Source: Macrostomum lignano
Lineage: Eukaryota
Assembly: GCA_002269645.1 (NCBI GenBank)
Contig: NIVC01004197.1
Span: forward strand, 1-55,754
Direction: 5' to 3'
Length of the DNA: 55,754 nucleotides
Positions within the stretch are counted from its first letter, which is position 1; every line of letters starts with the position of its first letter. The notes under the pieces are model-generated. The model worked only from the letters and a program-made list of their open reading frames with translations, was not told where the DNA came from and ran no database searches. Both the position numbers and the translations under genes were made by a program. Shown one piece after another: positions 16,694 through 39,030 of the stretch.

Positions 16694-19600
16694 ATGATCT
16701 GCAATAACTCACTCACAACGCAATGGGCTATTGTATGCTACTTTCAACCAAGATTTTGGTAAGATATAGGCCTACATACAGCCTGATCTGATTATATTTG
16801 TATTGCGTAATATTGTTAGGCTAGTATATAAATATAAAGTTGCATTCATGTCAGTGTCATTCTTAAAAATGATATTAGAGCTTGGTAGGAAGGTATATTA
16901 TTTTTGGTATAGTTGTGAATTGAATTTTTTGGTAACAGGCTGGCCCATAGATGCCCAACACCCATCCAACCTGTCCGAACCGGATGGGTGAAATGGCTGC
17001 CAGCCAAGGCAAGTCACAAAATTGTAAACGCAAAAAATAAAAAATTGGGGGAAGAAAGAAAGAAGAAAAAAGGGAAAAGAAAGGAGGGACTTGGGAGAAG
17101 AGAGAAAGGGGAAAAGAGGAGAAAGAGAAAGAAAAAGAAGAAAAGAGAAAAATGCAAGAAAAGTCATACAAAGTAAAAATTAAGTTGCAATTAGCAGGAA
17201 CTAAGTTGCAAATCTATACAAAACTAAGTCACACTAGATAGGTGAAATTTTGGACTTCTTCAAGTTTATGTTGATAAAATAGTTTCAATTTGGATAGGAT
17301 CATAATTTTGTCTCTACAGGGGTTTTTGATGGTGCTGATTTCAAATTTGAGCTCCATTTTTAGGTAGCTTTAACCCAATTATATGTAGCTTAAAACCAAC
17401 CACCGGGGCATGGGGAATGGGGGGTTTTAGGGTGGGGAGATTCTTCATGGGGATTGATTTTATCAACATAAACTTGAATAGAGGCATAGAGACCTATTCA
17501 AGATTGTGCTGATAAATTCCAATTCTAATGGGGGGGGGTTGTAGCTTAAAACCACCCACTGGGGCATGGGGAATGGGGGGTTTTAGGGTGGGGAGATTCT
17601 TCATAGGGATTGATTTTATCAACATAAACTTGAAATTGAATAGAGGCATAGAGACCTACTCAAGATTGTATTGATAAATTCCAATTCTAATAGAGGGGGG
17701 GGGGCGGTTGAAACAAGTTGGAATTTATTTGACAATGAATCTCTGTTTAATTATATCAACATAAACTTGAATCAACATAACTTTATCTAAATGAATTTGC
17801 TTACCGAAATTAAGTGCTGTTACTGCCTTAATACAATAGAATTAGTAATCTAGCCTTGTACAGTAGTTGGTTTTGAGGTGCGAAATACAAGTGCGAGTTT
17901 TGAATGTTGCTTTAGCTAGGTGCAGTGAAAGTGCAAGTGCAAAGATTGAGCACATTGTGACGTGGCAGTTTTTAAAAAAAAGCACACAGTGACGTGGCAA
18001 TGTCTATGCATTATAACTAAATTGAAAAACTATAATCCGCAAACATAAAAAACATTTGCATATTAATTTGTAGATATTAGTCTACTTTAAGAAAGAAAGA
18101 AACTTTTTCTTACCAAACCTCATTAAGAGAATAGGGAATCAAGTAAATCGTCATTGCATCAACCGTACAGGTAACTTTCTACACTTTTTTTTGCATTTTT
18201 GCAATTTTGAATCCCCCATAAGTCTCCACCGGAAGTTTCAGAAAAATTGAAAAATCGGAAGTATTTTATCAACATAAACTTGAAGAAGTCCAAAATTTTG
18301 AGGTTGGGCATATATGGGCTAGTCCTAAGTCTACTAATAAAGGCAAAGAAGGCTATGTTATTTAAATAACTTTGCTAAATAAGCATGCCCTATTATATAA
18401 GCCTATGACACTAGTAAATTTGTGCACCATTGCACTAGCTCATATGGCATAGTTGTAATGGTATGCTGACACTAAAGTTGTAAAAAATTACTTTTTAACA
18501 ATGTTTTTTAAAGTAACTTCCAGTTCTAAGATCTAAGGTAAATAACTTTTGGCACTTGTTCCAATACCAGTACTTACTATAAAAAGTAACTTCTATTACT
18601 TCTACTACCAGTCCTAATTTTAAAGAATTGCCTATTATATTAAAAAGTGCTCAAACATGTCTTTATGAAAAAAGTATATACTAGCCCTAGTCTAGAGTTA
18701 AACATGCTATTATTCCTCCATAAAGATGCTTTATAATATTTATTATTATTATCACATTGAAAATTTGAGTGAATAAATAAAACCTTTATAAAACAAGGAT
18801 TAGCCCTATTAAAATAAATGTAAAAAATCTGCAAACAGGTGACAGGTCAAATTATAGCTCAAAAACACAACATGATATAGAACATGTTAACTTTTGAACT
18901 GAATATAGTACAGGCTAATACTAATTAGCTAATGAGGAATCTAGCCCTAATAAGACAATCATAGTTATTCTTGCTGTTTACCCAAAAATTGCATTGTGCC
19001 AGTACTGGCACACTATCTACCTTGACTTCAACTATAATGCAACACTAGAAAGTTCCAAAATTGCAATAGACAATCTACCACGGTTCGGATCGTGTAGTAG
19101 TGTACGCCGGAACAAGAATCCTATCTCAGCTAAATGTATGCCAGTGTATGCCAAAAACAAAAAATTCCCTTAAATGTACGCCAAAAATTCCTCCTAAAAA
19201 AGGTCATTTGGTTTTCACAAGTAGAGTTTTCTAAGAAAGGTTTTTTGTACGAAAAGTCTTTCAAATCTTACGAATATTTTCATTTTAAAAAAACTTAAAT
19301 TAAACCTACAGAAAAAAGAATGCAAAATTTACATTCTTAGCAATAATTTACACAAGTTTTATTCATTGTTAATTGTAAAAAAGCAAAAAGTTTATCACTG
19401 ACTTTTAAGACTATATAAATTTTCTTTTCATTTTATGTAAAAACTAAAAAGGGTTAATTTACATTACAATTTTTTTACACGCATCAATTTATTCACCAAA
19501 ATTGGTACGCCAAAAATTTCTCGAGCTCAAAGTGGTACGCCAAAGTGGTACGCCAAAATAGCCAAACTTCTCAATGGTACGCCGGAAAATTCCGGCTTAC

Positions 19601-22600
19601 ATGTAACCTTCCTGAGTGTGGCCAATCTAATGCTTTTGTCCACTTATTCCAATAAAGAGGATTAGTAGTATCTAATATATAAAGATACTACATATGTGAT
19701 TTACCCTATTGGAATAAATGTTAAAAACCTGTGGACGCGCGCTTTAAGATTATTAGAGATGTTCCAAAAGATCTGCAGTTTCGTCAAAATCAAAATTCGC
19801 TAACTTTCCAAAATCAAAATTGAAATTTCCTGAAATCATAATTCAGAAAAACAAAGTTTAGTATGATCATACATGCGCAACCCCCAAATTTCGGTTGGCC
19901 ATGCGACTTAGTTTTAACAAAAATGCGACATACTTTTTGGCCAAAAATGCGACTTACATGTAAAAAAAACCAAAAGCAAAATTAACGCAACTTTGGGTAA
20001 ACAAAAGGAGTAACTATGACTGTCTTATTAAGCCAAAATGCCTCATCAGCTACTTAGTATTACTACTTGGGTGTTTTTTCGGGTGGGTATTTTTGCAACT
20101 TCCTTAGTTGGCTGCCAAATCGGTCAGCCAGATTGGCCGACTCGGCCGACTGTTGCGCATGTATGAGTATGATCAACACTCACTTTTTTAGTTTCAATTT
20201 ACTGCTTAAGCAGAAAGTAATACATGTATTATGTAGTAGAAAGTAGTTTATTTTTAGCGACTTTTTTGACACTACTAAAATTTTCACTTCTAAATTTTTT
20301 TTGAAATTGAAATTTGCTCTAAAAAATTTCAAATTTTAGAAAATTGAAATTGAATCTTTGGAACATCTCTAAGCTTAATAAATTACAAGTGTATAAGCCC
20401 CTTCAACAGAGGTATTATACCCATTTCCATGTATATGTATTTGCTAGAGCAGCAGGCAGCAGCCAGTAAGAAAGGGCAGCGCACGCACAGGCGCTGCGCC
20501 TATGCGCGCATTGCACTTTAGAAAAATTTCAAAAGTGTGCCGGACACCATCCGCAGTTTTACAACTTTTCCTATAGGGGTGATTTATAGAATGAAATTCA
20601 AAGACAGATTTTCAAATGTTTATTTTGACTCTAAAGTTATATAAAAACAAGGGCAGATTTAGAGGGAGATAGAGGGTGAGGCAGCTGCCATTTCTATCCC
20701 AAAATAGCTTGATAAAACATATTGTGCCCCCAAAACCTACAAGGGGCAGTCAAAAAGTTCTTGGACTTTGGTTCATAAAACCAAAAGGGTAAGTCTAGTC
20801 AGTTTTAATTTTTAGAATTTTTCAAAGTAATCTCCATTAGCATTAATGCAGCAATCCTAGTGCTTTGGCAATTTCTTGATCCTAGCAGCAAACCACTCTA
20901 GGTTGACCTCTAAACCACTTCTCAAGGTCACGCCTAAGCTCCTTTTTATTGCTATAATGCCCACCATGGAGGGCATCCTTCATCAAATTAAAGAGGTAGT
21001 AATTGCTAGGTGCCAGATTAAGGCTGTATAGTGGATGTGGCAGAATTCACCAGTTTTTTCTGCATATTTCTGCCAGTGTAGCTTGGGATATGTGGGGCTG
21101 CGCATTGTCATATAGCAGAAAAATGCCAACATGCAGTTTCCTAGGTTGGCATTTGACTAGCTGCAACTATAAACCAGCTAGGGATGCCATATAGCACTTA
21201 GAGTTAAGGTCTGGCCTTTCTTTAGGTAGTCAATGAAGATGACTCTTTCACAGTCCTAGAAAATTGTTACCATTTGTTGAGCCTGGTGCGTGGGGTTGGG
21301 GTATGCTTTTACTCTGTGTATTGTTTGTGTTCTTAACTCTGTGCATGTACTCATGGTCTGTGGCTCATGCTCTTTGCACGTCTCTGCTCTATTGTGATTT
21401 TAATGTACATTGTTGGTGTTTTAGCCCTGGGGTGGGGGTGGCTACTATTGAACCTCGCTTGTAATAAATCGTATTGTTGGTTGTTGGTGCACTTGGCACT
21501 TTTGTCTCGTCTCGCATACTCTCAGCTCATGACTTGTTCATTTCAACACCATTGTTTTAGTGACAGCTGGTACTGCCTTGGCCTTGGTTGGAGAGGGCTC
21601 TCCAAGGGCCACCCAAACTTTGGACTGCTGTTTAGTTTTAGGGTTGTAGTGTGGTAACTAGGTTTTGTCAGTGGTAACAAAATTATAATAAATAATAATC
21701 TAGTAATAAGATCACCTCTTTTTTACCTCTTTATAATTGTACTGTAAGTATTTTGGTGAAAGTTTTCCACTTTTGGAATATATTTAGTGCTAAATTGGCT
21801 ATTTTGGCACCTCAAATTTCTTTTTCAAGTGCATGAAAACTGGAGTTATCAAAAAGTAACTTATACCTTAGGTCAGATACTTTAGGTTTAGGATCTTGAA
21901 ACCAAAATGTAAAACCTTAGGTAACTTGGCTTGCTACTATTGTTGGCATTGCTACTACCTCTATAACCTTAAAAGAACTATCTTGTTTTTTAAAGCAGTT
22001 GAGACAAGGTTTTATAGCTTTCTTAGTGGTGTTGACCTAGGCACTGACCTAGAAACACAAGTACCACTTTTTTCAAATTGGTTAATATTAGAACTCTTGA
22101 ATTTCTTAAGTAGTGGCTCAATACTCTTGCAGTATGTCTTGTACAAATCTGCTTCTTTCTTCTTTTCCAGTGATACAATTTGGTTAGAAACTGTCAAAGA
22201 ATACTTTAGAATTGTAGTTTGGGCCTTTAGCCATTATTATTGGATGGTTCATTGTCCTCATCTTTCTCTTCATTATCTGCTTCATTAGCATCACTATCTT
22301 TATAACAGTTCTTTAGAATACTTAGAATTTTCATCAATAGATATGAGGGGTGTCCAAAAAGTAGTGATACTTTTAACCGTAGCTCTCATTCTATAGTTTC
22401 CTGTGATTTAAAATTTTATAAACTGATAGTGGCAAATCTCTTCTACAGACTGCTTTTTGAATATTTAAAATTGATACCAGAGAACAAAAGTTTTACCCAC
22501 AAAAGTAATAGTACCTGCATCATATAGTTACACAAACTATATCAAAATTTATGATAGTCGACTTCTGCACTTATTCATTAAGAAGGCATCGATAAATGTC

Positions 22601-25600
22601 TTGTTTAAGCAATACCAAAGCCCAATTGCAAAATGATGCTCACTGTGACTGACTGAAATTTGTCTATGGACAGAATCATGCACAGAAAAATAAAGCATTA
22701 AATTCATTACTTTACTTGCAAACAGAGGAGCTTGCATTTTGCAATTGATTTCATTGCCCATACTCAACAACACACATGGATGTGCACTCAGTTGTTGCTC
22801 AGCAAAGTACTATCTTCACTCTTTGGGGTGCTGGCCATAGTGCCTCAGAAATTCACGCAAAACTTTGCTCTGCGCATGGATCCTCTGTGGTCAGCAAAAT
22901 GACAGTTTATTGATGGATGGAGCAGTTCAGCAAGGGAAGGACTGACTTGGCAGATCAGCATCGGACAGGGCGGCCATACGTTCATCAACCTGATGTACTG
23001 GCGACTCCATTCTGAATCATCTTGATGAGGACTCCCGAATGACCATTAGAGAGATCGCTGACAGGTTGGACAAGCCAAAATCAACAATTCATCGAAGCTT
23101 ACTCGGCATGGATCTCGTGAAGCTCAGCCTATAATTTGTGTAACTCTATGATACAGGTACTGTTACTTTCATGGGTATAACTTTTGTTCTCTGGTATCAA
23201 TTTTAAAAATTCTGTAGTCTGTAGAAGAGATTTGCCGCTATCAATTCATAAAATTTTAAATCACAGGAAGCTATAGAACAAGAGCTATGGTTAAAAGTAT
23301 CACTACTTTTTGGACACCCCTCGTATCTCCTTGTCAAGATTCTCAAATGTAGCTTCAATATTATAAGTATCTTCAGAAAGGTATTCAATAGTTCATTTAG
23401 CAATTTTAATAGTAGCATAAGAGCCAAGCTTGACAATAACAGCATCATGAAATCCATTTTGATATTTAAAGTTGGATTTTTCGATGCTCCTTAAATTCCA
23501 TTTTTGTAGCCTTATCAATATGACTAAGAAAACTAGAATTTACACAAATAACTCCACTGTGTATATTTGTCTTTGGGAACTATAAAATTACATGTTTGAA
23601 ACTTAAGGTTGCAAACTTGTCAAGTTTATTAGCTTGTTTTGAACAAGAAACTCTACTATCTCTCGTCCTATTGAAAGATTCTCAAAGTGAAAAAATAAAG
23701 TAATGGAGGTTCAAATTTTTTCAAATTTACATATATAATAAAAATGACAAATATAATAAATAAATCTATATAAAGTCTAGTAAAAAACATATAAATAGCT
23801 AAAATAGGGACTTTATTAAGGGTCCTATGCAGCTATGGATCCAGAAAAGTTTTGTGGGGGAGAGACAAGCTATGCTACTATATCAATCACTATAACCCAA
23901 TATTGGAAAATAGACCTTGCATTGTTGCAAGCCAAAAAAATATGGCCCAATTTTTTTACCTTGGCTGAAAGGTGTGGGCATTGCCCCCTTTGCCCCCCCA
24001 CCCCCTGGATCCACTGGTCCTTTGACTTGCCAACATGCATAGAAAACAAAAGGGAAATTTGACTTAAAGGGTGGTGGCTCATGTATGGCAAATGAATTAA
24101 CCTTATGTAACTCCACCTTATAAGCTTAAGTTCACATAATAGTCCCTAATGTCCCCTTGCTTGTTATCTCCTATTTCAGGTCCAACTTAAGAGTGCATGG
24201 ACATTTTTATAATTTTAACAAATATGCCATCTTTATAAGCAACTTAATCAAGATAAATATATGTACTTTTATTTACATAGCAGTTTTTATGGTACACTTT
24301 TTGTATACTAGAATTTTCACTTGAGCCATATATACACAAAAATATGTAGTGCATTGACAATCAAAAATCTTGAAATCTAATGATGACTACAAATTTAACC
24401 AGGGAGCCTTATTAACTCTTTTTCTGGCAATGAGCATTGTCATAGTTACACTGAGAAACTGCAAGTCTATGTTGAATTCAATTTATAAAGCAACTATGTG
24501 ATGGAATAATCCTACAGAAATTGACCAAACACCATTGCCATTACCAGGCTGTTTCGCCTGCGGCATGTGCAACGGATTTCGTATTTACAACACCGAGCCG
24601 CTAAAAGAGAAAGAGCGCCAAGATTTCCCAGGGGAATCTGGCAGTGGCGGTGCAATGGGCGGCGTTCGTCTCATTGAGATGCTCTATAGGTGCAATTACG
24701 TTGGCCTGGCATTTTCTAACAATCCCAAATATCCGCCTAACAAGGCCGTCATCTGGGATGATGTGAAGAAAAAGTTTGTCATTGAAATGGAATTTGCTAG
24801 CGAAGTGCTGGCTATTAGACTAAGAAGGGAGAAGTGAGTGATTTTTTATGTACAGATTGATCCCATCCCTGAATCTACAGATTGATCTCATCTCTGAATC
24901 TACAGATTGATCCCATCTCTAAACCTACAGATTGATCCCATCTCTGAATCTACAGATTGATTCCATCTCTTAATCTACAGATTGATCCCATCTCTGAATC
25001 TACAAATTGATCCTATCTCTAAACCTACAGATTGATCCAATCTCTAAACCTACAGATTGATCCAATCTCTAAACCTACAGATTGATCCCATCTCTAAACC
25101 TACAGATTGATCCCATCTCTAAACCTACCGATTGATCCCATCTAAACCTACAGATTATCTACAGAGTGATCCAATCTCACTATCCTCTCACCCACAGGAT
25201 CGTTATCGGTCTGCACACAGCCGTGAAAGTGTTCACATTCACCCAGCCGCCCAGCCTGTTACACGTGTTCGAATCGAGCCCGAATCCCCACGGTTTAATA
25301 GCACTGTGCCCCTCGTCTGACCGGCAACTATTAGCCTTCCCCGGGCACAGCAGTGGGTCGGTGGCCCTGGCCGATCTGGGCCAGCCAGACCGACCAAAAG
25401 GCCAATCCGCTAATCTGCTGCACGCTCACGAAGGCAGATTGGCGGCCCTATCTATGAACAGTCGCGGCACATTGTTAGCAACTGCATCTGAGAAGGGCAC
25501 ACTGATTCGCGTGTTTCAACTGCCTCAACAGCAGCAGCAGCAGCCGCAGTTGCTGCACGAGCTCAGACGAGGATCTCAGCCTGCCCGAGTTTATTGCGTC

Positions 25601-27316
25601 ACATTCAGCTCCGATAGCGGGTTGCTATGCGCCGCTTCCGATCGAGGCACCGTACACGTGTTCCGATTAGATTACAATGATCAACAGTTGAGTCAGCGGG
25701 CTAGCGGCGAGTCTCAACAGCAGCAGCATCACGCTCTGGAAGCTTCGCCAGCAACTGCTGCCGCTTCTGTAGCAAAATTCTTTAGTCAGGTTACTAGCGT
25801 AGCCAGGTTGCCAATACAGCCAGGCGTGCCGACTGTCTGCGCCTTCGGACAGGATAGCTTAGGCCGCACCTGTTCGCTTATTGGTGAGATATTTGATGTT
25901 CATTATGCTACTTGTTAGTAGGATATCGATCTAAATAATGTTAGCGCCTAATAGGCAATGACCTCCAAAAGAAGTTCTAATATTGAGGCCCGTAATTAAA
26001 CATCAGGTGTTATTAAGTCCCCTAATTAAACATCAGGTGTTATTGAGTCCCCTAATTAAACATCAGGTGTTATTAAGTCCCCTAATTAAAATAAGGGTGT
26101 TATTGAGTCCCCTAATTAAGCATCAGGTGTTATTGAGTCCCCTAATTAAAGATCAGATGTTATTGAGTCCCCTAATTAAAGATCAGGTGTTATTGAGTCC
26201 CCTAATTAAACATCAGGTGTTATTGAGTCCCCTAATTAAACATCAGGTGTTATTGAGTCCCCTAATTAAACATCAGGTGTTATTGAGTCCCCTAATTAAA
26301 CATAAGGTGTTATTGAGTCCCCTAAATAAACATCAGGTGTTATTGAGTCCCCTAATTAAGCATCAGGTGTTATTGAGTCCCCTAATTAAACATCAGGTGT
26401 TATTGAGTCCCCTAATTAAACATCAGGTGTTATTGAGTCCCCTAATTAAACATCAGGTGTTATTGAGTCCCCTAATTAAGCATCAGGTGTTATTGAGTCC
26501 CCTAATTAAACATCAGGTGTTATTGAGTCCCCTAATTAAACATCAGGTGTTATTGAGTCCCCTAATTAAACATCAGGTGTTATTGAGTCCCCTAATTAAG
26601 CATCAGGTGTTATTGAGTCCCCTAATTAAAGATCAGGTGTTATTGAGTCCCCTAATTGAAGATCAGGTGTTATTGAGTCCCCTAATTAAAGATCAGGTGT
26701 TATTGAGTCCTTCAAAAAATTGCTTAGCATGCCAATGTTCTTAAAAGTATCGGCGACATTGGTCAGTCCTAATGATGAGTATAAATTTGTTTTAGAGAGC
26801 CTACCTTTCATTTATTGGGCGATGAGCATTGTCATAGTTACTCTGAAGGACTTGAGTTATTATTGGATTTTAATTATCATTGTTCAGCCGTGCAAGATTG
26901 TACAAAAATCTTGTCTATTTGAGTACATATAATTGCTTAGGTTACTGATAACTATTTTACAGAGTAGAGTTCTAATGATGAGTATATTAATCTGTTCGAG
27001 AGCCTGTAGGCTTTTAGCCTTTGCATTATTTGGCGATGAACGCTGTCATAGTTACTCTGAAGACTCTTACGACTTTAAATAGTGTAGGTTGATAGATTCA
27101 TTTTTGTGTATTTTGTTTATAATTTGGAGCCTAGATGATGAGTAAACATATTCTCAGGAGCCTGATTTGCTATTTTTGGCAAAGACTATTGTCATAGTTA
27201 CACTGATAGACTCCATTATATTTAGTTTTTTATAGTTATAGACTGGCTCATTTTAAAAAGCGACATGTCACACAACCGGCGAGAGGCATTACTGCCCGTT
27301 CCGCCGACTCCCCTGA
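16694..27316 (+). CDS. WIPI3: WD-repeat phosphoinositide-interacting protein 3/4 (PROPPIN, Atg18 family); exons about 16694-16758, 24548-24833, 25198-25883 and probable last exon 27261-27316
   Basis: Exon 1 encodes NGLLYATFNQDF|G followed by GTAAG; exon 2 GCFACGM.NGFRIYNT.PLKEKE..., KYPPNK..IWDD; exon 3 AHEG.LA..S.N..GT.LATASEKGTLIRVF and lipid-binding LRRG motif. Start codon is out of frame by 1 nt. Last exon (ATCH..G...Y..F) is tentative. Confidence 0.85.
17245..18298. mobile_element. Non-autonomous DNA transposon with 37-bp perfect terminal inverted repeats, possible AATT target duplication
   Basis: 17245-17281 AAATTTTGGACTTCTTCAAGTTTATGTTGATAAAATA is the exact reverse complement of 18262-18298. 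TIR sub-motif TATCAACATAAACTTGAA is repeated internally, with an internal tandem duplication of about 150 bp. Confidence 0.85.
18990..19630. repeat. Probable non-autonomous DNA element with clustered GTACGCC subterminal motifs
   Basis: (T/G)GTA(C/T)GCC occurs about four times near 19100-19190 and about four times near 19500-19585, around an AT-rich core; termini not resolved. Confidence 0.4.
19754..20371. mobile_element. hAT-like MITE (outer element), interrupted by a nested MITE
   Basis: TIR TAGAGATGTTCCAAA ... TTTGGAACATCTCTA (Ac-like TAGAGATG terminus); TSD not preserved. Confidence 0.65.
19868..20165. mobile_element. 298-bp hAT-type MITE carrying a 28S rDNA-like segment
   Basis: Perfect 14-bp TIR CATACATGCGCAAC; perfect 8-bp TSD AGTATGAT (19860-19867 and 20166-20173); 28S-like segment at 19995-20058. 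Confidence 0.9.
20740..21690 (-). mobile_element. Mariner transposon remnant (catalytic C-terminal half plus one TIR)
   Basis: TA + CAAGGGGCAGTCAAAAAGTT terminus. Minus-strand translation gives VTTDKT.L.HYNP.TKQQSK.W, MVTIF*D, YDNAQPH, HPLYSLNLAPSNYYLF and NGDYFEK*, with stops and frameshifts. Confidence 0.9.
21275..21548 (+). mobile_element. Solo LTR inserted in the mariner remnant
   Basis: TGTTGA...TCAACA termini, 5-bp TSD CCATT (21270-21274 and 21549-21553), internal AATAAA. Removing it rejoins the mariner reading (KTM|VTIF). Confidence 0.85.
22344..23323 (+). mobile_element. Internally deleted mariner element with long (about 195 bp) TIRs
   Basis: TA-flanked (T/C)GAGGGGTGTCCAAAAAGT termini. 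22776-23130 encodes the mariner HTH region (GHSASEIHAKL...TVY*W...F.KGRTDLAD..RTGRP; MTIREIA.RL...KSTIHR); no DD34D domain. Confidence 0.9.
23830..24016. mobile_element. hAT-type MITE
   Basis: Ends CAGCTATGGATCCAG ... CTGGATCCACTG; near-identical 8-bp flanks GTCCTATG / GTCCTTTG; G/C-rich subterminal TTGCCCCC motifs. Confidence 0.65.
24375..24458 (+). ncRNA. SNORD46: Box C/D snoRNA, U46/SNORD46/snR63-type (copy A, weak terminal stem)
   Basis: Box C ATGATGA at 24380; guide TTGTCATAGTTACA directly upstream of box D CTGA at 24451; near the 3' end of WIPI3 intron 1. Confidence 0.75.
24853..25165. repeat. 25-bp minisatellite in WIPI3 intron 2
   Basis: Unit CTACAGATTGATCCCATCTCTAAAC, about 12 copies. 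Confidence 0.95.
25985..26711. repeat. 30-bp minisatellite in WIPI3 intron 3
   Basis: Unit CCCTAATTAAACATCAGGTGTTATTGAGTC, about 24 near-identical copies, no spacers. Confidence 0.97.
26765..26852 (+). ncRNA. SNORD46: Box C/D snoRNA, U46-type (copy B)
   Basis: Terminal stem AGTCCT/AGGACT, box C ATGATGA at 26772, C'-like GCGATGA, guide TTGTCATAGTTACT, box D CTGA at 26843. Confidence 0.9.
26967..27066 (+). ncRNA. SNORD46: Box C/D snoRNA, U46-type (copy C)
   Basis: Terminal stem GAGT(T)CT/AGACTC, box C at 26975, guide CTGTCATAGTTACT, box D at 27057. Confidence 0.85.
27126..27214 (+). ncRNA. SNORD46: Box C/D snoRNA, U46-type (copy D)
   Basis: Terminal stem GGAGCCTA/TAGACTCC, box C at 27135, guide TTGTCATAGTTACA, box D at 27203. 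Confidence 0.85.
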
Positions 27317-27614
27317 TCATACGATCAGGTCAAGCCAAGCCAAGATCAGCTCTAGACTACTAGCTTATTGGGGGGGGGCGTTGCTGAAATGCTGTGGCTC
27401 ATGGTGGCTGCTAAGATGCTTTGATCCTAGGCTCATAGTGAGTCATAGCGGATCTGATAGGCAATGCTTTTTCACTTTAATAATCTTTCCTAAAAGATTA
27501 GTAATCGTGACTACAAGGTCAAAGCGTACCTGTTGGTTTATTAAAAATGTTTCTTTTTTTCTTGCCTCCCCAACAGGGGGCACAGATAGCTAGTTTAACC
27601 TTTTTTATTAAATA

Positions 27615-27709
27615 TTTCGAGTCTTAATGATGAGTTCAATTTGTATAGAGAGCCTGTTGTATTTTATTTGGCGATGAGCATTGTCATAGTTACACTGAAA
27701 GACTCGAAA
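27615..27709 (+). ncRNA. SNORD46: Box C/D snoRNA, U46-type (copy E)
   Basis: Perfect 11-bp terminal stem TTTCGAGTCTT/AAGACTCGAAA, box C at 27627, guide TTGTCATAGTTACA, box D at 27695. Confidence 0.9.
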
Positions 27710-28141
27710 TTTAACTTTTTAGGTAAATTATTTTTCGAGGCATTTTATAAGCTGGTATTTCATTGTCTTAAGTAGAGTTGCATTGCAATCTAAAAAAAGT
27801 TTTGTTGTCAACAAATCGATTTTGAGAGAAACTTTTAAACTGTACTCGTTTATTCTTTTGAGGATTAATAACCAAATAATAAATAACCATAGCATTTTAA
27901 TTTACTGCCTAATGCACTCCGATTAACAATATTGTATTGTAAATTAATAAACGGGAGATAAATATAAAGATAAGCAAGCCAAGGACCGTTACAAGAGATT
28001 TAGGACGAGCAACGCAAAATTGAAGAATAAGAAAGTAAAAGTGTTACGTCACTATGCACTTTTTTAATTAGAATACTTATTAATAGTCGTGAAATCATAA
28101 TCAGAGGCTTAAATCGGAACTCGGTTGCAAGAACGCTCTAT

Positions 28142-30237
28142 TTAATGCTTCACTGCAGTGGCATTGCAAAAGGCCACTTGGTACTTTTTCGGGTCGTGCC
28201 CTCGCTTCAGTCGAACCAATTTCAGATTTCTATTTAGATACTTGGCGCTGTTAAAGTCGTAGGCATTCTTAATCAGGATGTTGAGCACTGACTGGTCATA
28301 TCTGTGACAGTGCATGTATCGACTCTTATAAGCGTGCTGATTGCGATGAAGGTTTGAGCACTTTCGTCTGGCTCTTAGCGGAGCCATGCAGTGCCTTTCT
28401 AGGCCGCAGAGTACGAACCAGAGCATGATGTTGTCACGAACGAATCTTAAAGGAAAGAGGAATATGCGAATAACGGTTCAAAAGTTTCATAGTTCAAACT
28501 TAAGACCATTGAGATTGTTTTCTCTATAAAAAAACTAATAGATCGGCTTCTCAAATGACGAAGTTATGAGAGAGAAAAAAAGAGCAGCTAATAATAATAA
28601 ATAATCATTTCGCAACGCCTTGAAGGACATAGTCAACGCAAGTGTTGTATAGCAGTCTTTACTTTCTAATCGTCAGGCGAATTTTCTTGCACTAGCCCTA
28701 AATGATGCAGTCGTGCCAAGGGTCGTGACGCGAGAGTCAGGTGCGTTTGACGCTGAGCTACTCTGTCCCAATGATGAGAGATGAGTACCCGGCACCAAAG
28801 TGATCTAGATCGAAGAGTGAACAGCGCCAGCTTACTTAATATCACTTACTTTGTATTAATAAGTATAATAGGAGCCGTTTGCATTTGCCCGCTAGTTTTA
28901 ATGCGCAACGGATCTGTTGGCAGGTACCGGTACACTTCCGGATGCGTCACTGTCAGCGTAGAGTACACGTGCTTGCCGCCGAATATCATAGCACCAGTCT
29001 GTTTAGCGAGTTGCACAGCTCGGCCTAGCATTGCCGCATTCATCACTACTCGAGACGAAGATTCTAGCCATAGTATAGCGCCGTACTCGTTTAGTGCGGT
29101 CTGTAGAACTAGCGGTTTCCAGTAGAATCGCGATATTAGCCTTGTGTAAGCTGGATAGCCCACAAATACAAACTTTCGATAGTGCACGTTGCATAACCGT
29201 TTGAGCTGCGTGTTTTTAAGATGAATTTCAATATACGATTACGATGCCACATATCAATAGACCCTATAAGAAAGGCACAACATTCAGTAAAAAAATTTAA
29301 AAGTCAAAAAGATCAATAAACATCAAAAGATGAACACTAGCTGGGTCTCTCCCTGATACCGAAAGCAATAACAATTTGTGTGCTGAAAAAATAGTTACTT
29401 CCTATCTCCGTAGTGTATTTTTCGGCGAAAACCAGCCTCCTCAACATTTTCTAAGAAACGGTAGTTTCCCGTCCTACTTGAGTATTTGTGAACTTAAGCT
29501 CACAAAGCTACTCACCTGAGTAATCTCGTCCATTTTGAGTCCAATGTCAAACACAACCAGTGTTCGATTTGGAAATTGTTTCTGTACGCTAGCAATCATG
29601 TCTAAGCTGTCTTCAAAGCGCAGATGGCTCACAGCCGTCACGAATTGTACGTCGCGTATCTTTTGCGCATCTTTCACGCAATGATTTAGTCCTGTTAGGC
29701 CAAGCCGTCTCAGTATTGGACTAGTTTTACGCACCGTGAAGTAAAGGCCCTTTCGTTTGGGTTGATATGGCGGCGAATACTGCAGGTGTTGCATGCGATG
29801 CCGCATGATGGCGTGCTTCAACGCTGCTAGTTGGAATCGTTGCGGATTTGGTCGCTCGTGGAAGTGGCGTTGGGAGCCGGCAACCATCGCTGCGTGATGA
29901 CGCAACGATTCGTCGTGTTGACGGTCTTTGTCGCTTCGATTGACAATCTTTAGGTTTCGTAAATTGCGTGAGACTTGTAGTTTTAGAATTTGAGCAGTAA
30001 AGAAAACTAAACTACGAGTAAAGTAAAAGATTCTACCCTCACAAAACGTAGAAAATTCACCTGAAGCCTTGGGGTATTTTTCAATTGACTGTCTCTACGC
30101 ATGTCGTTTTTTATAAACAAAGTTGACTGAAAAAACTGGTATAAAAAGCAACAAAAATATCTGAAGGATCTAAAGTCCTTAGTTAAATTATCAATTAGGG
30201 ACAAACGACTGAAAAATTCCCTATCGCGCTGATGCAT
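28142..30237 (-). CDS. DUF1647-family protein (putative glycosyltransferase-like, probably membrane-anchored); exons about 30237-30061, 29947-29516, 29205-28850, 28445-28142
   Basis: Family-typical motifs FVTAVS...F.....I.SVQ..FP....V.FDIGL, F.F..YP.Y......F.WKPLV, THP.VY.YLP, W.VLC.LE..CM.P, CHRYDQS.LNIL. Junction phases are compatible. Start codon uncertain. Confidence 0.8.
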
Positions 30238-30288
30238 GTTGGGCCAAAAATAGACATTCAGTAAAATTTTGAGCATTTAGAAAGGGGC

Positions 30289-30373
30289 ATCACAAACCCG
30301 AAATATCATAACGCCGAAAACTAAAATAGCTAGCGCTAGCGCTTTCGGTGTTATGATATTTCAAGTTTGTGAT
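30289..30373. repeat. 31-bp inverted repeat with palindromic spacer upstream of the DUF1647 gene
   Basis: ATCACAAACCCGAAATATCATAACGCCGAAA pairs with TTTCGGTGTTATGATATTTCAAGTTTGTGAT (3 mismatches); spacer contains GCTAGCGCTAGC. Confidence 0.8.
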
Positions 30374-31995
30374 ATTTCCGGTTTATGAAAGCGATCCATT
30401 AGGAAGAGCAGCGTTCGTCTGCTTAAGTACAGTAGTACGAGATGTGGACAAAACAGTCTGTCAAGGGAACTTATTCACTTACTCACGTATATACTCGTAG
30501 CTACGAGCGTATATGCAAACACACGACCTTTTAAAGTTAGTTAATAAAGCTAAATTAAACTACTGCAATAGTAAAATATATTCACGTAATACTTACATTG
30601 CTATTAATGACGGAATGCTGATAGAACACTATTATAAAGAATAGCAATACCACCGATATAATTGAGGCATAGCGAATAAAAAATTTTGTTGCCAATTGAC
30701 TCTGCGCTGCGTAGTTTACGTGCGGCATGGCTACTGAATTTTAATAGAGAATAATTAATAGTCGAGTTGATCCGTTGCCCTTATACTTGAAAGAATATTG
30801 CTACTCCCTCTAGTTAGCTGACGTGTATGTTTCAGTCTCGGTTGACTGTTATATATTTTCAAAAAAGCTGCCTCGAACGCTCACCCATTCTCTTCTCTCC
30901 CTCTTAACTTCTCTCGTTCGTATTTAAACGTTTTAAAACTTGGCTTCCTTCTGCCTCCCGCTGAGCTGACTCAATTTCTACTGTTAGATCCCAACTTTCT
31001 TTCTTTCTCTTGATTTGCACACTGCTGCACTGCCTTCCCTTCAGTAATATACATAATAATGTATGTCAAGCCTTTATGGCAGTTTGCGCGCGCGCGCGTG
31101 TGCGTTTCCTATGTGAACAACTTGTGCTCAAAAGTTGAATGGAGGACGTAGGAAAACCCCCAGCCCGACAGACAAGGACAATAGTGTGTTAGTATGGCTT
31201 AGAAATGAAGTTTCTAGCGTCTGAACTGAGCTATCGAGCTATCGAGTTCAGAGGTCTGTCGAGGGGTGCGGGTTGGGCAAGCCAGAAAAATCAGGCGGTG
31301 AATCAATATCAACTTTTTCCTTATAGTTCACTTCTAGTCTAACTTGATTGATACAATCTGTTTAATCTGACTTGTTATCGGGCTGTTAGTGGAAACCCCC
31401 TTTTCAAATTTATAGTTAATATGGGAGATCAGCTGCCAGACTAACACGGGGACTCTTGACAGATATGAAACGTGACACAATAGTCACTTCAGTACACCTC
31501 ATTTTATTGGAATTGGAATTTTATCCTTAATACAATAATTGGGTACAGTAAGTCTCAAGTAAGTCATCATCTAAATCCCGCAGCTATCACGGCTAGCGGC
31601 AATTATCTGAAGTTCAAACTCGGCCCCGGCTCAATCAGCGACCAGGTGCACAGAGAGGTATACACTAACTACCTGGATATGACGCAAGACTCTAATAACT
31701 AAACGGTTAGAGGCTATCAACTCCTTCGATTTACAATTTGCGTGCCAATTTTGCTACTCGTATGTAAATGTCAATATCTCCGCTGCTAGAGATCGCAATG
31801 CTCAGAATTAAGCATCCCGTTGTTGATTTTTTACGAACAGAAATTTTGCATGCTTTTTTGATTAGCAATTTCTTGTGTTTAGTCATTCTTCGCTCAACGA
31901 TTCCATAGTGCATGGCTTATATTTTAAAAGTTGAGTTATAATAACTCCTAACAGTTTCTCTGCTAGGAGTTTGCTCAGCTGATAAGAGCGACTCT

Positions 31996-33432
31996 TGGGA
32001 TATCCTGATAAGGGTGACACTAGGGGTGTCTTGATAAGGGTGACACTAGGGGTGTCCTGATAAGAGTGACACTAGGAGTGTCCTGAAGGGTGACACTAGG
32101 AGTGTCCTGAAGGGTGACACTATGAGTGTCCTGATAAAAGTGACACTAGTGGTTTCCTGATAAGGGTGACACTAGGAGTGTCCTGATAAGGGTGACACTA
32201 TGAGTGTCCTGATAAAAGTGACACTAGGAGTGTCTTGATAAGGGTGACACTAGGGTGTCTTGATAAGGGTGACACTAGGAGTGTCCTGATAAGGGTGACA
32301 CTAGGAGTGTCTTGATAAGGGTGACACTAGGGTGTCTTGATAAGGGTGACACTAGGAGTGTCCTGATAAGGGTGACACTAGGATTGTCCTGATAAGGGTG
32401 ACACTAGGAGTGTCCTGATAAGAGTGACACTAGGAGTGTCCTGATAAGGGTGACACTAGGGTTGTCTTGATAAGGGTGACACTATGAGTGTCCTGATAAG
32501 AGTGACACTAGGAGTGTCCTGATAAGGGTGACACTAGGGTTGTCTTGATAAGGGTGACACTATGAGTGTCCTGATAAGAGTGACACTAGGGTTGTCTTGA
32601 TAAGGGTGACACTATGAGTGTCCTGATAAGAGTGACACTAGGGTTGTCTTGATAAGGGTGACACTAGGAGTGTCCTGATAAGGGTGACACTAGGATTGTC
32701 CTGATAAGGGTGACACTAGGAGTGTCCTGATAAGAGTGACACTAGGGTTGTCTTGATAAGGGTGACACTAGGAGTGTCCTGATAAGGGTGACACTAGGAT
32801 TGTCCTGATAAGGGTGACACTAGGAGTGTCCTGATAAGAGTGACACTAGGAGTGTCCTGATAAGGGTGACACTAGGGTTGTCTTGATAAGGGTGACACTA
32901 GGAGTGTCCTGATAAGGGTGACACTAGGATTGTCCTGATAAGGGTGACACTAGGAGTGTCCTGATAAGAGTGACACTAGGGTTGTCTTGATAAGGGTGAC
33001 ACTATGAGTGTCCTGATAAGAGTGACACTAGGGTTGTCTTGATAAGGGTGACACTAGGAGTGTCCTGATAAGGGTGACACTAGGATTGTCCTGATAAGGG
33101 TGACACTAGGAGTGTCCTGATAAGAGTGACACTAGGAGTGTCCTGATAAGGGTGACACTAGGGTTGTCTTGATAAGGGTGACACTAGGAGTGTCCTGATA
33201 AGGGTGACACTAGGATTGTCCTGATAAGGGTGACACTAGGAGTGTCCTGATAAGAGTGACACTAGGGTTGTCTTGATAAGGGTGACACTAGGAGTGTCCT
33301 GATAAGGGTGACACTAGGAGTGTCCTGATAAGGGTGACACTATGAGTGTCCTGATAAGAGTGACACTAGGAGTGTCCTGATAAGGATGACGCTAGTGGTT
33401 TCCTGATAAGGGTGACACTAGGGGTGTCCTGA
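31996..33432. repeat. 26-bp tandem satellite
   Basis: Unit CCTGATAAGGGTGACACTAGGAGTGT, roughly 55 copies with recurring variants. Confidence 0.97.
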
Positions 33433-34808: not shown

Positions 34809-37800
34809 TCAATCGCTCTCCTCGCTGGCCTCCTGCAGCCATTGGATCATTCTAGCCACGCACTGCCTCAGCTCGCCAGCATTGGGATGCGAGCCCTCTT
34901 CGCTGTTCCAGCTCAATATAGCCGCCTCCTCGCACAGATCCGTATCGTAGAAATAGCGCAACAAAACTAGAGCGCACTTCATCAACGGCTGAGGCCGGTC
35001 GCAGCAGGCGTCTTCAAAGCTGCGCAAAAATATTAGTGACTCGTCCTGGCTAGAGAAGCCATTGAAGTAGTGCTCTGCGGATAAAAGTGCAAAGCGACAG
35101 GTCAGCTTGGACTGCCTCTAACCGCCCAATGCCCCAACAGCCATTTATCAGATAATTGCACAATGCCCACCCCACTCCCCAGCTCCAGCTTATTAGATAA
35201 CTGCACAATGTCCACCCCCACTCCCCAGCTCCAGTTTATCAGATAATTGCACAATGCCCACCCCACTCCCCAGCTCCAGCTTATTAGATAACTGCACAAT
35301 GTCCACCCCCACTCCCCAGCTCCAGTTTATCAGATAATTGCACAATGCCCACCCCACTCCCCAGCTCCAGCTTATCAGATAAATGCACAATGCCCACCCC
35401 CACTCCCCAGCTCCAGCTTATCAGATAGATGCACAATGCCCACCCCCAGTCCCCAACACCCATTTATCAGATAATTGCACAGTACCCACCCCCACTCCCC
35501 AGTTCCAGCTTATCAGATAAATGCACAATGCCCACCCCCACTCCCCAGCTCCAGCTTATCAGATAGATGCACAATGCCCACCCCCACTCCCCAACACCCA
35601 TTTATCAGATAATTGCACAGTACCCACCCCCACTCCCCAGTTCCAGCTTATCAGATAAATGCACAATGCCCACCCCCACTCCCCAGCTCCAGTCCATCAG
35701 ATAATTGCAAAATGTCCACTCCCTATTCTAAAGCAATTAAAATTCCATTAGTCAACACCTAACTCACTTAGCAACGGTTTCCAATTCTCCAGACAATCTT
35801 TGACTTGGCTAAAGTGCTCAGCCGGGGTGATCTCAACCTGACAGTCCTCTGACTCGTCATCTTTTTCGCATTTAAGCAGCGGATACAACAAAATAGTGTA
35901 AGCCAGGATCGCTTTCAGTCTATCGATATGCACACAGAAGGCGTGCTTAATTGAGTTGATCTCAACCACCATAGTGTCCACTGGGTGTTTGTCCTGTTCA
36001 GCGCGTTGCAGCACGTCGAGCAGTTCGCGTTTGAAGTGATCTTCGCCCACCTCTGCTGGTGGCACCTGGGAAAGCAATTTAGCACTAATTAGATATCCGA
36101 TATGTATCGATAGTAACTTTGAGACAGTTTTATTTGCGACAACTCTACTTACAACAAAGTAGTAAGAAAGAATATGTAAACTATTTTACTCGCATGAGAA
36201 AGAGCAGATCGAGTGAAATCTCAAGTCCATAAATAATTAGCGCCTAACCTCGTTACCGGCTTCACTAGAACTGTCCGACTCAGACGACAGATACTCAACG
36301 TTGTCAGCCATGAGAGTAGTCTGCCAGATCTCCAATTCAACAGAGTCTTCATCATTCTCTGGTCCGGAGTCGGCGTCTGAGTCGCCGGCCTCGTCACGAC
36401 GATCGCTGTAGGCCGATTTGTAGACAGCGGCGTTGCTGTCTTTACCGAGTTGCTGCGGCAATTGAATGATAGATTAATAATATGCGTTCAAGCTACTGTA
36501 AGTAGGCCTGTAAGGAAATACTAATATTCTTTAAATGTTAGTTGAAAGCTTGAATTTAAATAAATCCTAATGTTAAATTTGAATTAGAGGGCGATTCTTA
36601 TTGTTGGATTAAGGCGATTCTTATTGTTGTTTTAAGGCGATTTTTATTGACGGTTTTAGCCGATTCTTATTGTTGGTTTAAGCCGATTCTTATTGTTGGT
36701 TTAAGGCGATTCTTATTGTTGGTTTAAGGCGATTCTTATTGTTGGTTTAAGGCGATTCTTATTGTTGGTTTAAGGACATTCTTATTGTTGGTTTAAGGCT
36801 ATTCTTACTGTTAGTTTATGGCGATTCTTATTGTTGGTTTAAGGCGATTCTTATTGTTGGTTTAAGGACATTCTTATTGTTGGTTTAAGGACATTCTTAT
36901 TGTTGGTTTAAGGCTATTCTTACTGTTAGTTTATGGCGATTCTTATTGTTGGTTTAAGGCGATTCTTATTGTTGGTTTAAGGCGACTCTAAAACTCAGGT
37001 TTTTACTATTGGTCAAAAAATTACAATTTTTCATTAAAAAACAAGAAACAGATTCCATTGACCCACACCTGTTTGACTTCCTCGTCAGTGGAAGCGCTGT
37101 CCTCTGACCTTCCTGATCGCACAATCAACCTACAATTAGTCAGCACGACAGAAGGCCCAACTCGCACACCGTGAGTCAGCACGCATCGATCAGTGAGTTG
37201 GCTGTCATCCAGTACTGTGCTGTTGTGGCACAGCAGTGACCTTGAAATGTTACAGTCGCTGCTGACCACAGCTCCGGGCCACAGATAGCAGTCACTCAGC
37301 CGAGTCCGGTCGCCAACGCGACAATTGGAGCCAATCACGCAGTTAACCAGGTGACAACCGGAACCAACCTGAGCCCCTGGTCCGATGAGAACGGATTTTT
37401 CTAGCCGAGCGCTACGATGGACGCTGGCCAGGCGGGATACATAGACATTGCGCTGGCGCACCTGGTGCTCTGTGGCAGCCCGACTGCCTGACATGCTGGC
37501 TGGGGTCATCTGCCAGTGTTAGTTAGGAAAAATATTAGAGTATCATTCAAAAAAGTTCTAAAAAGACATTGAGATATCGGCTATGAGAGGGGAAGAGTTA
37601 GATAGGAGTAGATATGGAAGAGAGGTAACAGGGAAGAGGTAGGTTGGGAGTAGAGATGGCAGGGGAGAAGTAGAAGGTAGAGATGTCAGGGGGAGAGGTA
37701 GGTAGATAGAGGGTAGAGATGGCAGGGGGAGAGGTACATAGAGGGTAGAGATGGCAGGGGGAGAGGTACATAGAGGGTAGAGATGGCAGGGGGAGAGGTA

Positions 37801-38955: not shown

Positions 38956-39030
<75 letters not shown>

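What the first reader, a model, noticed from the sequence alone, without database searches (positions are those of the whole stretch)
24375..27709. Five paralogous U46/snR63-type box C/D snoRNAs dispersed through an autophagy (WIPI3) locus, three in one intron
Seen: five units of about 85-100 nt (24375, 26765, 26967, 27126, 27615), each with ATGATGA ... (C/T)TGTCATAGTTAC(A/T)CTGA. Four have terminal stems that differ between copies yet still pair (AGTCCT/AGGACT, GAGT(T)CT/AGACTC, GGAGCCTA/TAGACTCC, TTTCGAGTCTT/AAGACTCGAAA), while the interiors have drifted. Established: the guide is complementary to LSU rRNA helix 69 (AGUAACUAUGAC), the D+5 rule points to the A equivalent to yeast Am2256 (snR63), and human SNORD46 ends in the same UUGUCAUAGUUACACUGA, but its host is RPS8. 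Inference: a lineage-specific amplification in a non-ribosomal host, with B, C and D apparently sharing one intron (unusual in animals, where one snoRNA per intron is the norm) and E lying beyond the probable stop codon. This implies polycistronic intronic processing, hidden non-coding exons or UTR introns.
Basis: partly seen in the sequence, partly recalled or inferred. Interest (0 to 1): 0.75.

Follow-up and report, generated by a model that had tools for sequence, protein, structure and literature searches.

The report
Five flatworm U46-type snoRNA genes
Two introns of an autophagy gene (WIPI3) in the flatworm Macrostomum lignano carry five old, diverged copies of a small guide RNA predicted to direct one conserved methylation in the ribosome; the RNA family is well known, and only its host gene and the four-in-one-intron layout are unusual for an animal.

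Summary
Exactly five units on the + strand carry ATGATGA ... TGTCATAGTTAC(A/T)CTGA, against 0.03 expected by chance. The window is a whole contig of Macrostomum lignano.

They are box C/D snoRNA genes of the U46/SNORD46/snR63 functional family. Their guide pairs with 11-12 nt of the LSU helix 69 loop and selects the A that is Am2256 in yeast. Rfam gives only sub-threshold hits, but to the right families.

Function is supported in three ways:
- C box, guide and D box are identical in all five copies, while interiors are only 39-69% identical.
- Terminal stems covary.
- Against a second M. lignano contig with the same five units, the units differ by 1.5% and the surrounding intron by 4.8%.

The last coding exon is at 31584-31702, so B, C, D and E all lie in one 5.7-kb intron. 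A lies 93 nt upstream of the acceptor of the preceding intron.

WIPI3 loci of a brachiopod, an annelid and a placozoan lack such a unit. Eleven environmental contigs carry RPS8 exons on the same stretch as a unit. The WIPI3 host therefore looks derived.

Expression and processing are untested. Verdict: new members of a known kind, modest interest.

The parts
24380..24454 (+). Unit A. Box C ATGATGA at 24380-24386, guide TGTCATAGTTAC at 24438-24449, box D CTGA at 24451-24454. It has no terminal stem and ends 93 nt before the end of intron 1 (intron ends at 24547).
   Evidence: 85.7 bits with R1, a model built from these same copies. It has 3 differences from the sister contig in 97 nt, so constraint is weakest here.
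26765..26852 (+). Unit B. Stem AGTCCT (26765-26770) pairs with AGGACT (26847-26852). Core 26772-26846.
   Evidence: SNORD46, 20.9 bits over 26765-26852; the minimum-free-energy fold keeps the terminal stem. The core is identical in the sister contig.
26967..27066 (+). Unit C. Stem GAGT(T)CT/AGACTC. Core 26975-27060, with an extra 12-nt hairpin insert (AGGC-TTTTA-GCCT) between the D' and C' elements.
   Evidence: (snR63 18.7 bits, snoR442 21.1 bits).
27126..27214 (+). Unit D. Stem GGAGCCTA/TAGACTCC. Core 27135-27206. Its C' element is weakest (AAAGA).
   Evidence: (snR63 19.7 bits). The stem mismatch at 27130 is a perfect pair in the sister contig.
27615..27709 (+). Unit E. Stem of 11-12 bp, TTTCGAGTCTT/AAGACTCGAAA. 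Core 27627-27698.
   Evidence: SNORD46 20.7 bits; 105.4 bits; fold z-score -2.5. The whole unit is identical in the sister contig.
16694..16758 (+). Candidate first coding exon of the host gene (MICNNS..NGLLYATFNQDFG, donor GT at 16759). In the window a 4-nt CTCA duplication shifts its frame.
   Evidence: The exon is in frame in sister contig L001.
24548..24833 (+). Host coding exon 2 (WIPI3/WDR45B-like).
25198..25883 (+). Host coding exon 3.
25884..31583 (+). Last host intron, 5700 nt. It holds a 30-nt minisatellite (25981-26710), units B-E (26765-27709) and a gene on the opposite strand (28142-30728).
31584..31702 (+). Last host coding exon (AITASGNYLKF...DSNN, stop TAA at 31700-31702).

Best explanation
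The five units are box C/D snoRNA genes of Macrostomum lignano. They are functional counterparts of human U46/SNORD46, yeast snR63 and Arabidopsis U46.

Inferred mechanism. Each unit would assemble with the core box C/D proteins, including the methyltransferase fibrillarin, on a terminal C/D kink-turn. The 11-12 nt upstream of box D would pair with the loop of helix 69 of 28S rRNA (GUAACUAUGAC). This places the second A, the equivalent of yeast Am2256, opposite the fifth guide nucleotide for 2'-O-methylation.

The interior letters that never vary also fit a second, internal kink-turn: NNGA-GCC ... GGC-NNN-GA, meaning a D'-like GA, a 3-bp stem and a C'-like GA. The sequence upstream of D' is not conserved between copies, so no shared second guide is apparent.

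Inferred biogenesis. All five units lie on the sense strand of introns of the WIPI3 gene and are most likely cut out of its pre-mRNA. A sits 93 nt from the 3' splice site and has no stem. From memory, that distance is near the range that favours splicing-coupled assembly in mammals. B-E share one 5.7-kb intron and lie 3.9-4.8 kb from its 3' splice site. They carry 6-12-bp external stems, as expected for splicing-position-independent assembly followed by endonucleolytic separation and exonucleolytic trimming.

History. The copies arose by old local duplication, before the split of the two M. lignano contigs compared here. The WIPI3 host is probably a relocation from an RPS8-type host.

Status of each step. 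Shown: the sequence features, the gene structure and the conservation. Inferred: expression, processing route and methylation.
For: - Five exact guide plus D-box matches against 0.03 expected.
- Geometry fits a C/D kink-turn: stem, 3-nt bulge, GAUGA ... CUGA, stem.
- The best sub-threshold Rfam hits for four of the five units are SNORD46, snR63 and snoR442, which share this guide.
- C box, guide and D box are invariant, while interiors are 39-69% identical.
- In the terminal stem 77.7% of cells pair, against 33-48% when partners are slid. Six pairs change on both sides.
- The interior GCC/GGC pair is invariant.
- The sister contig NIVC01001781.1 has the same five units in the same order.
- Units differ from the sister contig at 7 of 473 positions; flanking intron differs at 76 of 1573 (Fisher p = 7e-4). 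No difference falls in a box or in the guide.
- The CDS maps exactly, which places B-E in one intron and A in the preceding one.
- Target assignment is documented in PMC2794176 (Am2256, snR63, helix 69) and PMC2685112 (U46 in Arabidopsis, human and yeast).
- WIPI3 loci of three other phyla lack the unit. RPS8 exons lie on the same stretch as a unit in 11 environmental contigs.
Against: - No Rfam family reaches its gathering score.
- There are no expression data, and the M. lignano 28S sequence was not examined. The target rests on the universal conservation of helix 69, which is established knowledge.
- Unit A lacks a stem, has a weaker C' element, and diverges at 3 of 97 positions, close to the intron rate. 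It may be decaying.
- Unit D has a degenerate C' element.
- The conservation test uses only two closely related contigs and seven differences.
- Exons between the units, or an independent promoter, cannot be excluded without RNA-seq.
- The internal kink-turn is my own reading of the invariant letters. It was found in only 8 of 108 environmental relatives, against 1.75 in shuffled controls.
Confidence: 0.8

Rival explanations
1. The units are real snoRNA genes but follow the one-snoRNA-per-intron rule. Short non-coding or alternative exons lie between B, C, D and E, as in UHG/GAS5-type hosts. They would produce frame-shifted, decay-targeted isoforms of the WIPI3 transcript alongside the coding mRNA.
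For: The segment 26888-26940 is bounded by an acceptor-like TTGTTCAG and by AG|GT. It carries no difference between the two contigs. One snoRNA per intron is the prevailing pattern in vertebrates and silkworm (PMC3089462).
Against: The deposited CDS joins 25883 directly to 31584. The donor GTTACT is poor. Zero differences in 53 nt is not significant at a 4.8% background (about 7% by chance). No comparable candidate exons were identified between C and D (58-nt spacer) or between D and E. External stems of 6-12 bp on exactly the four distant units fit splicing-independent processing.
Confidence: 0.12
2. Some or all copies are decaying relics, either snoRNA pseudogenes or retroposed or transposon-borne copies. 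At most one would still be functional, and the true functional U46 gene would lie elsewhere, for example in RPS8.
For: Unit A has no terminal stem, and its divergence of 3 in 97 is near the intron rate. Unit D has a degenerate C' element. The rest of the genome, including RPS8, could not be searched.
Against: All 24 positions of C box, guide and D box are intact in all five copies, apart from the one variable letter before box D. They are also intact in all five sister-contig copies, despite interiors that have drifted to 39-69% identity. The units have no poly(A) tails or obvious target-site duplications in their flanks (by eye). All five are on the host's sense strand and at syntenic positions in the sister contig. 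Stems keep pairing through double changes.
Confidence: 0.06
3. The cluster B-E is an independent polycistronic transcription unit that happens to lie inside the intron, as in plant and yeast snoRNA clusters. It would have its own promoter and not depend on WIPI3 transcription.
For: Clusters of two to four units with this guide, 160-1075 nt apart, occur in 34 of 120 environmental contig stretches. Independent polycistronic clusters are the norm in plants and yeast (PMC7671301).
Against: All units share the host's strand. No promoter could be assessed, because the promoter scan offered is for bacteria only. The clustered environmental units seen are mostly short and AT-rich and look plant-like, which is my judgement. 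The GC-rich D-E spacer is not conserved.
Confidence: 0.1

Closest known systems
Human SNORD46 (U46), Rfam RF00218
   Same: Box C/D architecture. Identical 3' end UUGUCAUAGUUACACUGA. Same predicted target, the helix 69 A (Am3739 in PMC2685112). Intron-encoded on the host's sense strand.
   Different: The host is RPS8, one copy in its own intron (PMC5025248). The interior is unrelated, and the Rfam score here is 20.7-20.9 bits against a cut-off of 40. Macrostomum has five copies in WIPI3, four of them in one intron.
Yeast snR63, Rfam RF01259 (same clan, CL00061)
   Same: Guides Am2256 in helix 69 (PMC2794176). Same antisense element. Units C and D give their best clan hit to this model.
   Different: The Rfam model for snR63 is 255 positions long. 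From memory, snR63 is independently transcribed. Scores here are 18.7-19.7 bits against a cut-off of 50.
Arabidopsis U46-1 and U46-2; Rfam snoR442 (RF01232)
   Same: Same guide and target (Am2246 of 25S). One copy lies in an intron of a gene that is not RPS8 (At3g51800) and one lies in a cluster (PMC2685112). The snoR442 consensus shares the interior GCCUGU ... GGCG arrangement just upstream of the guide.
   Different: Different kingdom. The score is 21.1 bits against a cut-off of 50. Plant clusters are usually independent polycistrons.
Intronic snoRNA gene clusters of Drosophila and rice
   Same: Several snoRNAs on the sense strand inside a single intron of a protein-coding gene.
   Different: The paper read here describes the Drosophila clusters as H/ACA clusters (PMC3089462). 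The rice case is known to me only from its title in that paper's reference list. Here the cluster is four box C/D paralogues with one and the same target.

Membership tests
Box C/D snoRNA | Box C (RUGAUGA) near the 5' end and box D (CUGA) near the 3' end, 60-100 nt apart, brought together by a terminal stem with kink-turn geometry (stem, 3-nt bulge, GA) | tested here: met
   All five units have ATGATGA and CTGA spanning 72-86 nt. B-E have 6-12-bp stems directly abutting CTGA and separated from GAUGA by 3 nt. A has the boxes but no stem.
Box C/D snoRNA | Internal D' and C' boxes | tested here: inconclusive
   The invariant interior letters GA-GCC ... GGC-NNN-GA fit an internal kink-turn. The boxes are degenerate and the assignment is my own inference.
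Box C/D snoRNA | Accumulates as a discrete small RNA bound by fibrillarin, NOP56, NOP58 and SNU13 | not testable with these tools
U46/SNORD46/snR63 functional family (Rfam clan CL00061) | At least 10 nt upstream of box D complementary to the LSU helix 69 loop, with the fifth nucleotide opposite the A that is Am2256 in yeast and Am3739 in human | tested here: met
   UGUCAUAGUUAC(U/A)-CUGA gives 11 bp with GUAACUAUGAC, or 12 bp in B and C. The fifth nucleotide is U, opposite the second A. Target identity comes from PMC2794176 and PMC2685112. The M. lignano 28S itself was not read. Conservation of helix 69 is established knowledge.
U46/SNORD46/snR63 functional family (Rfam clan CL00061) | Score at or above the Rfam gathering threshold for RF00218 or RF01259 | tested here: not met
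   No gathering-level hit. Best scores are 20.9 and 20.7 bits (SNORD46, cut-off 40) and 19.7 and 18.7 bits (snR63, cut-off 50). This is an operational criterion for the Rfam models, whose consensus matches these units mainly at the boxes and guide. I therefore file the units as functional counterparts, not as Rfam family members.
U46/SNORD46/snR63 functional family (Rfam clan CL00061) | 2'-O-methylation present at the helix 69 A in this organism | not testable with these tools
   Needs RiboMeth-seq or primer extension at low dNTP.
Intronic polycistronic snoRNA cluster | Two or more snoRNAs on the sense strand within one intron | tested here: met
   B-E lie at 26765-27709 inside intron 25884-31583 of the exactly mapped CDS. 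The layout is the same in the sister contig.
Intronic polycistronic snoRNA cluster | No exons between the snoRNAs, and release from the intron by endo- and exonucleases | not testable with these tools
   Needs RNA-seq junctions and processing assays.
snoRNA retroposon (snoRT) | Poly(A) tail and target-site duplications flanking the copy | tested here: not met
   No A-runs follow any unit, and no direct repeats flank them, on inspection of the flanks.

The most novel reading that the evidence does not exclude
Four box C/D snoRNAs with one and the same rRNA target are matured from a single 5.7-kb intron of an animal protein-coding gene, far from the splice sites. Their external stems would substitute for splicing-coupled assembly. 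This would be an intronic box C/D polycistron in a flatworm, a phylum where homology searches have found almost no snoRNAs. Copy number would compensate for a move from a highly expressed ribosomal-protein host to a weakly expressed autophagy gene. The frame-shifted first exon of this gene copy could additionally mean that one homeolog is turning into a pure snoRNA host.
Probability: 0.45. Interest if true: 0.45.

Novelty: new member of a known kind. Interest (0 to 1): 0.3.

Why it matters
Helix 69 forms the central bridge between the ribosomal subunits, and its Am is conserved from yeast to human. Finding the guide in a flatworm extends that conservation to a phylum where homology-based snoRNA annotation has largely failed. 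In Schistosoma only U3 was recognised (PMC2770079).

The locus also offers a small natural experiment on intronic snoRNA biogenesis. One stemless copy sits at a short distance from a 3' splice site, and four stem-bearing copies sit kilobases away in one intron. It also illustrates host-gene turnover, from RPS8 to WIPI3.

For genome annotation, the practical value is five snoRNA genes in each of two M. lignano contigs, plus a covariance model that can be run on the whole genome. None of this changes what is known about how box C/D snoRNAs work.

Tried and rejected
- Rfam at gathering thresholds on the whole window found nothing. Sub-threshold SNORD82 hits at 25978-26583 (- strand) fall on the 30-nt minisatellite and are spurious.
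- A sixth or decayed copy was sought with covariance model R1 in the window and in L001. None was found, and the best other hit scored 12.7 bits.
- Other box C/D candidates in the window were sought with a C-box/D-box/6-bp-stem scan. It returned only B and E.
- A hidden ncRNA in the GC-rich D-E spacer (27255-27470) was considered. The fold is only mildly stable (z = -1.8), and the segment diverges at or above the intron rate, with a 10-nt indel. Rejected.
- An ancient WIPI3-U46 association was tested on Lingula, Owenia and Trichoplax WIPI3 loci. They show no guide match, no R1 hit better than 18 bits (that one inspected and judged chance) and no Rfam snoRNA.
- WIPI3 was sought on the 120 environmental contig stretches that carry the unit. 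None was found.
- The internal kink-turn with a 3-bp stem was tested as a family-wide feature. Only 8 of 108 environmental units fit, against 1.75 in shuffles, so it is not general.
- Literature searches for Me28S-A2634, for SNORD46 together with snR63, and for snoRNAs in Macrostomum found nothing relevant. The Drosophila (PMC1370813) and rice (PMC135747) cluster papers are not held.
- I did not search for M. lignano RPS8. The protein search lists only the best 120 hits, and no collection of eukaryotic genomes can be scanned by DNA pattern.
Full report
**What is there**

The pattern TGTCATAGTTACWCTGA occurs five times in the 55,754-nt window, always on the + strand, at 24438, 26830, 27044, 27190 and 27682. 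Shuffles give 0.03 matches on average and never five. Each match is preceded by ATGATGA, so the C-box-to-D-box cores are:
- A: 24380-24454
- B: 26772-26846
- C: 26975-27060
- D: 27135-27206
- E: 27627-27698

The cores are 72-86 nt long.

Four units have flanking inverted repeats that abut CTGA on the 3' side. On the 5' side exactly three nucleotides separate them from GAUGA, which is the geometry of a box C/D kink-turn:
- B: AGTCCT/AGGACT
- C: GAGT(T)CT/AGACTC
- D: GGAGCCTA/TAGACTCC
- E: TTTCGAGTCTT/AAGACTCGAAA

Unit A has none. A covariance model built from the copies (R1) finds no further copy in the window.

**Source and host gene**

The coding exons next to the units are 100% identical to a partial 361-aa protein of Macrostomum lignano (BOX15_Mlig033971g1). 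That protein is 45-54% identical to WIPI3/WDR45B proteins from across animals. The window is the whole contig NIVC01004197.1 of assembly GCA_002269645.1.

The deposited CDS maps exactly onto 24553-24833, 25198-25883 and 31584-31702, ending in TAA, with GT-AG introns. Exon 2 actually starts at 24548. A candidate first exon lies at 16694-16758 (..NGLLYATFNQDFG|gt).

Unit A therefore lies in intron 1 (16759-24547), with box D ending 93 nt before the acceptor. Units B, C, D and E all lie in the last intron (25884-31583, 5700 nt), 0.9-1.8 kb from its donor and 3.9-4.8 kb from its acceptor.

That is wrong: it is four in one intron. The same intron also holds a 30-nt minisatellite upstream of B and a gene on the opposite strand downstream of E (DUF1647, window 28142-30728).

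**What the units are**

Rfam gives nothing at gathering thresholds. In the permissive mode, four of the five units hit families that share this guide:

| Unit | Family | Bits | Gathering cut-off |
|---|---|---|---|
| B | SNORD46 | 20.9 | 40 |
| E | SNORD46 | 20.7 | 40 |
| D | snR63 | 19.7 | 50 |
| C | snR63 | 18.7 | 50 |
| C | snoR442 | 21.1 | 50 |

In those alignments only the boxes and the guide match well. This fits the report that snoRNAs are poorly conserved in sequence and that, in Schistosoma, no known snoRNA other than U3 had an unambiguous homologue (PMC2770079).

The guide UGUCAUAGUUAC pairs with GUAACUAUGAC, the loop of LSU helix 69. In B and C the next base is U, which adds an A-U pair (12 bp). 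The fifth nucleotide upstream of CUGA is U, opposite the second A. That A is Am2256 in yeast, guided by snR63 (PMC2794176). It is Am3739 in human, guided by U46, and Am2246 in Arabidopsis, guided by U46-1 and U46-2 (PMC2685112). I did not read the M. lignano 28S. That helix 69 is invariant among eukaryotes is established knowledge.

**Evidence that the copies are kept by selection**

1. Among the five paralogues, C box, guide and D box are identical apart from the single letter before box D. The remaining interior is only 39-69% identical.
2. On the ten-sequence alignment, the terminal stem forms standard pairs in 77.7% of cells, against 33-48% when partners are slid by 1-3 columns. Six of eleven pairs change on both sides, for example C-G in B against U-A in E. 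The sequences are related and few, so this is supportive, not decisive.
3. A second M. lignano contig, NIVC01001781.1 (L001), is about 95% identical in non-coding DNA. It carries the same five units in the same order and encodes the same protein. Units with their stems differ at 7 of 473 aligned positions (1.5%), and the flanking intron at 76 of 1573 (4.8%), Fisher p = 7e-4. No difference touches a box or the guide, and the one stem difference (27130) turns a C-A mismatch into a U-A pair in L001.
4. For comparison, the coding exons differ at 2 of 1091 positions, both synonymous.

Three of the seven unit differences are in A, so A is the least constrained copy.

**Interior**

The interior letters that never vary are GAGCCU and UGGC.A.GA. 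They can be read as NNGA-GCC ... GGC-NNN-GA. That is a D'-like GA followed by a 3-bp stem, whose partner strand is followed by a 3-nt bulge and a C'-like GA, making a second kink-turn. The GCC/GGC pair is invariant in all ten sequences, and the Rfam snoR442 consensus pairs the same letters.

This reading is my own inference. Only 8 of 108 environmental relatives fit the same strict geometry, against 1.75 in shuffles. The 14-16 nt upstream of this D' element differ between copies, so no shared second guide is apparent.

**How it most likely works**

Shown:
- box C/D architecture
- the helix 69 guide
- sense-strand intronic position
- conservation

Inferred:
- The units are transcribed as part of the WIPI3 pre-mRNA.
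- A, stemless and 93 nt from the acceptor, is assembled in a splicing-coupled way. From memory, that distance is near the optimum reported for mammalian intronic box C/D snoRNAs.
- B-E, kilobases from the acceptor and equipped with external stems, are assembled independently of splice-site distance. They are then released from the intron by endonucleolytic cuts and exonucleolytic trimming. [quoted passage not shown]
- Speculatively, several copies in a non-ribosomal host make up for lower host transcription.

**Comparison and history**

Human SNORD46 lies in an RPS8 intron (PMC5025248).

- None of them encodes WIPI3.
- Eleven carry RPS8 exons on the same stretch. Where I checked the coordinates, the unit lies in an adjoining intron, and the intron differs between contigs.
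- Thirty-four carry two to four units 160-1075 nt apart. Those I inspected are mostly short, AT-rich units that look plant-like, though the organisms are unknown.

WIPI3 loci of Lingula, Owenia and Trichoplax have no such unit and no Rfam snoRNA. The WIPI3 host is thus not ancient and is probably derived from an RPS8-type arrangement. Local multiplication of this snoRNA is common in eukaryotes at large.

One snoRNA per intron is the pattern in vertebrates and silkworm. Intronic clusters, described as H/ACA clusters, are reported in Drosophila (PMC3089462). A rice paper on intronic snoRNA gene clusters appears in that paper's reference list. I could not read the primary Drosophila and rice papers.

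**Rivals**

- Hidden exons between the units cannot be excluded without RNA-seq. Its lack of homeolog differences is not significant.
- Pseudogene or retroposon copies are unlikely. All functional letters are intact in ten copies despite drifted interiors, there are no A-tails, and all copies share the host strand and syntenic positions. Unit A is the one candidate for decay.
- An independent promoter inside the intron cannot be assessed here.

**Verdict**

These are five new members of a well-known snoRNA family, in an organism and phylum where such genes are barely annotated. The host gene is unusual and the four-in-one-intron layout is uncommon for animals. Interest is modest (0.3). It would be somewhat higher if RNA-seq showed a true intronic box C/D polycistron.

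Noticed in passing
window 16694-16758 (about 16707-16714): The candidate first coding exon of the WIPI3 gene has a 4-nt CTCA duplication compared with the sister contig. This shifts MICNNSQRNGLLYATFNQDFG out of frame. It is either an assembly error or a real lesion in this gene copy. Both deposited gene models are 5'-partial.
   Followed up: partly
window 24851-25156, 25981-26710 and 32003-33432: Three minisatellites with 25-, 30- and 26-nt units lie in or just after the WIPI3 gene. The first two lie in its introns and differ greatly in length in the sister contig: the first spans about 1.7 kb there against 0.3 kb here, and the second about 0.25 kb against 0.73 kb. The 30-nt array gives spurious sub-threshold SNORD82 hits on the - strand.
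   Followed up: partly
window 28142-30728 (- strand): A 407-aa DUF1647 gene is nested on the opposite strand in the same intron as units B-E. The stretch 28676-30319 is 99.3% identical to the sister contig, against about 95% around it. No gene was called there in the sister contig.
   Followed up: no
window 34809-39825 (- strand): The neighbouring gene encodes a 695-aa protein with NTP_transferase, hexapeptide, LbH_EIF2B and W2 domains. It looks like an eIF2B epsilon subunit.
   Followed up: no
L025, L087, L061, L020, L024, L059, L114, L007, L118, L009, L048 (environmental contigs): U46-type units lie on the same contig stretch as RPS8 exons. Where I compared coordinates, the unit sits in an adjoining intron, but the intron differs between contigs (after about aa 38, 72, 130 or 172). 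This suggests the snoRNA has moved within RPS8 during animal evolution. The organisms are unknown.
   Followed up: partly
L018, L039, L014, L033 (environmental contigs, GC-rich): An unidentified eukaryote has three U46-type units spaced 218 and 159 nt apart. The middle one has a changed guide (AAGTCATAGTTAC). The spacing resembles the 214 and 146 nt of Macrostomum B-C-D, but the sequences are unrelated, so I take this as coincidence.
   Followed up: partly
window 17252-18293, 19077-20579, 22344-23324: Three stretches of intron 1 have no counterpart in the aligned part of the sister contig. They are probably insertions or deletions of repeats. A 156-nt tandem duplication lies at 17384-17685.
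   Followed up: no
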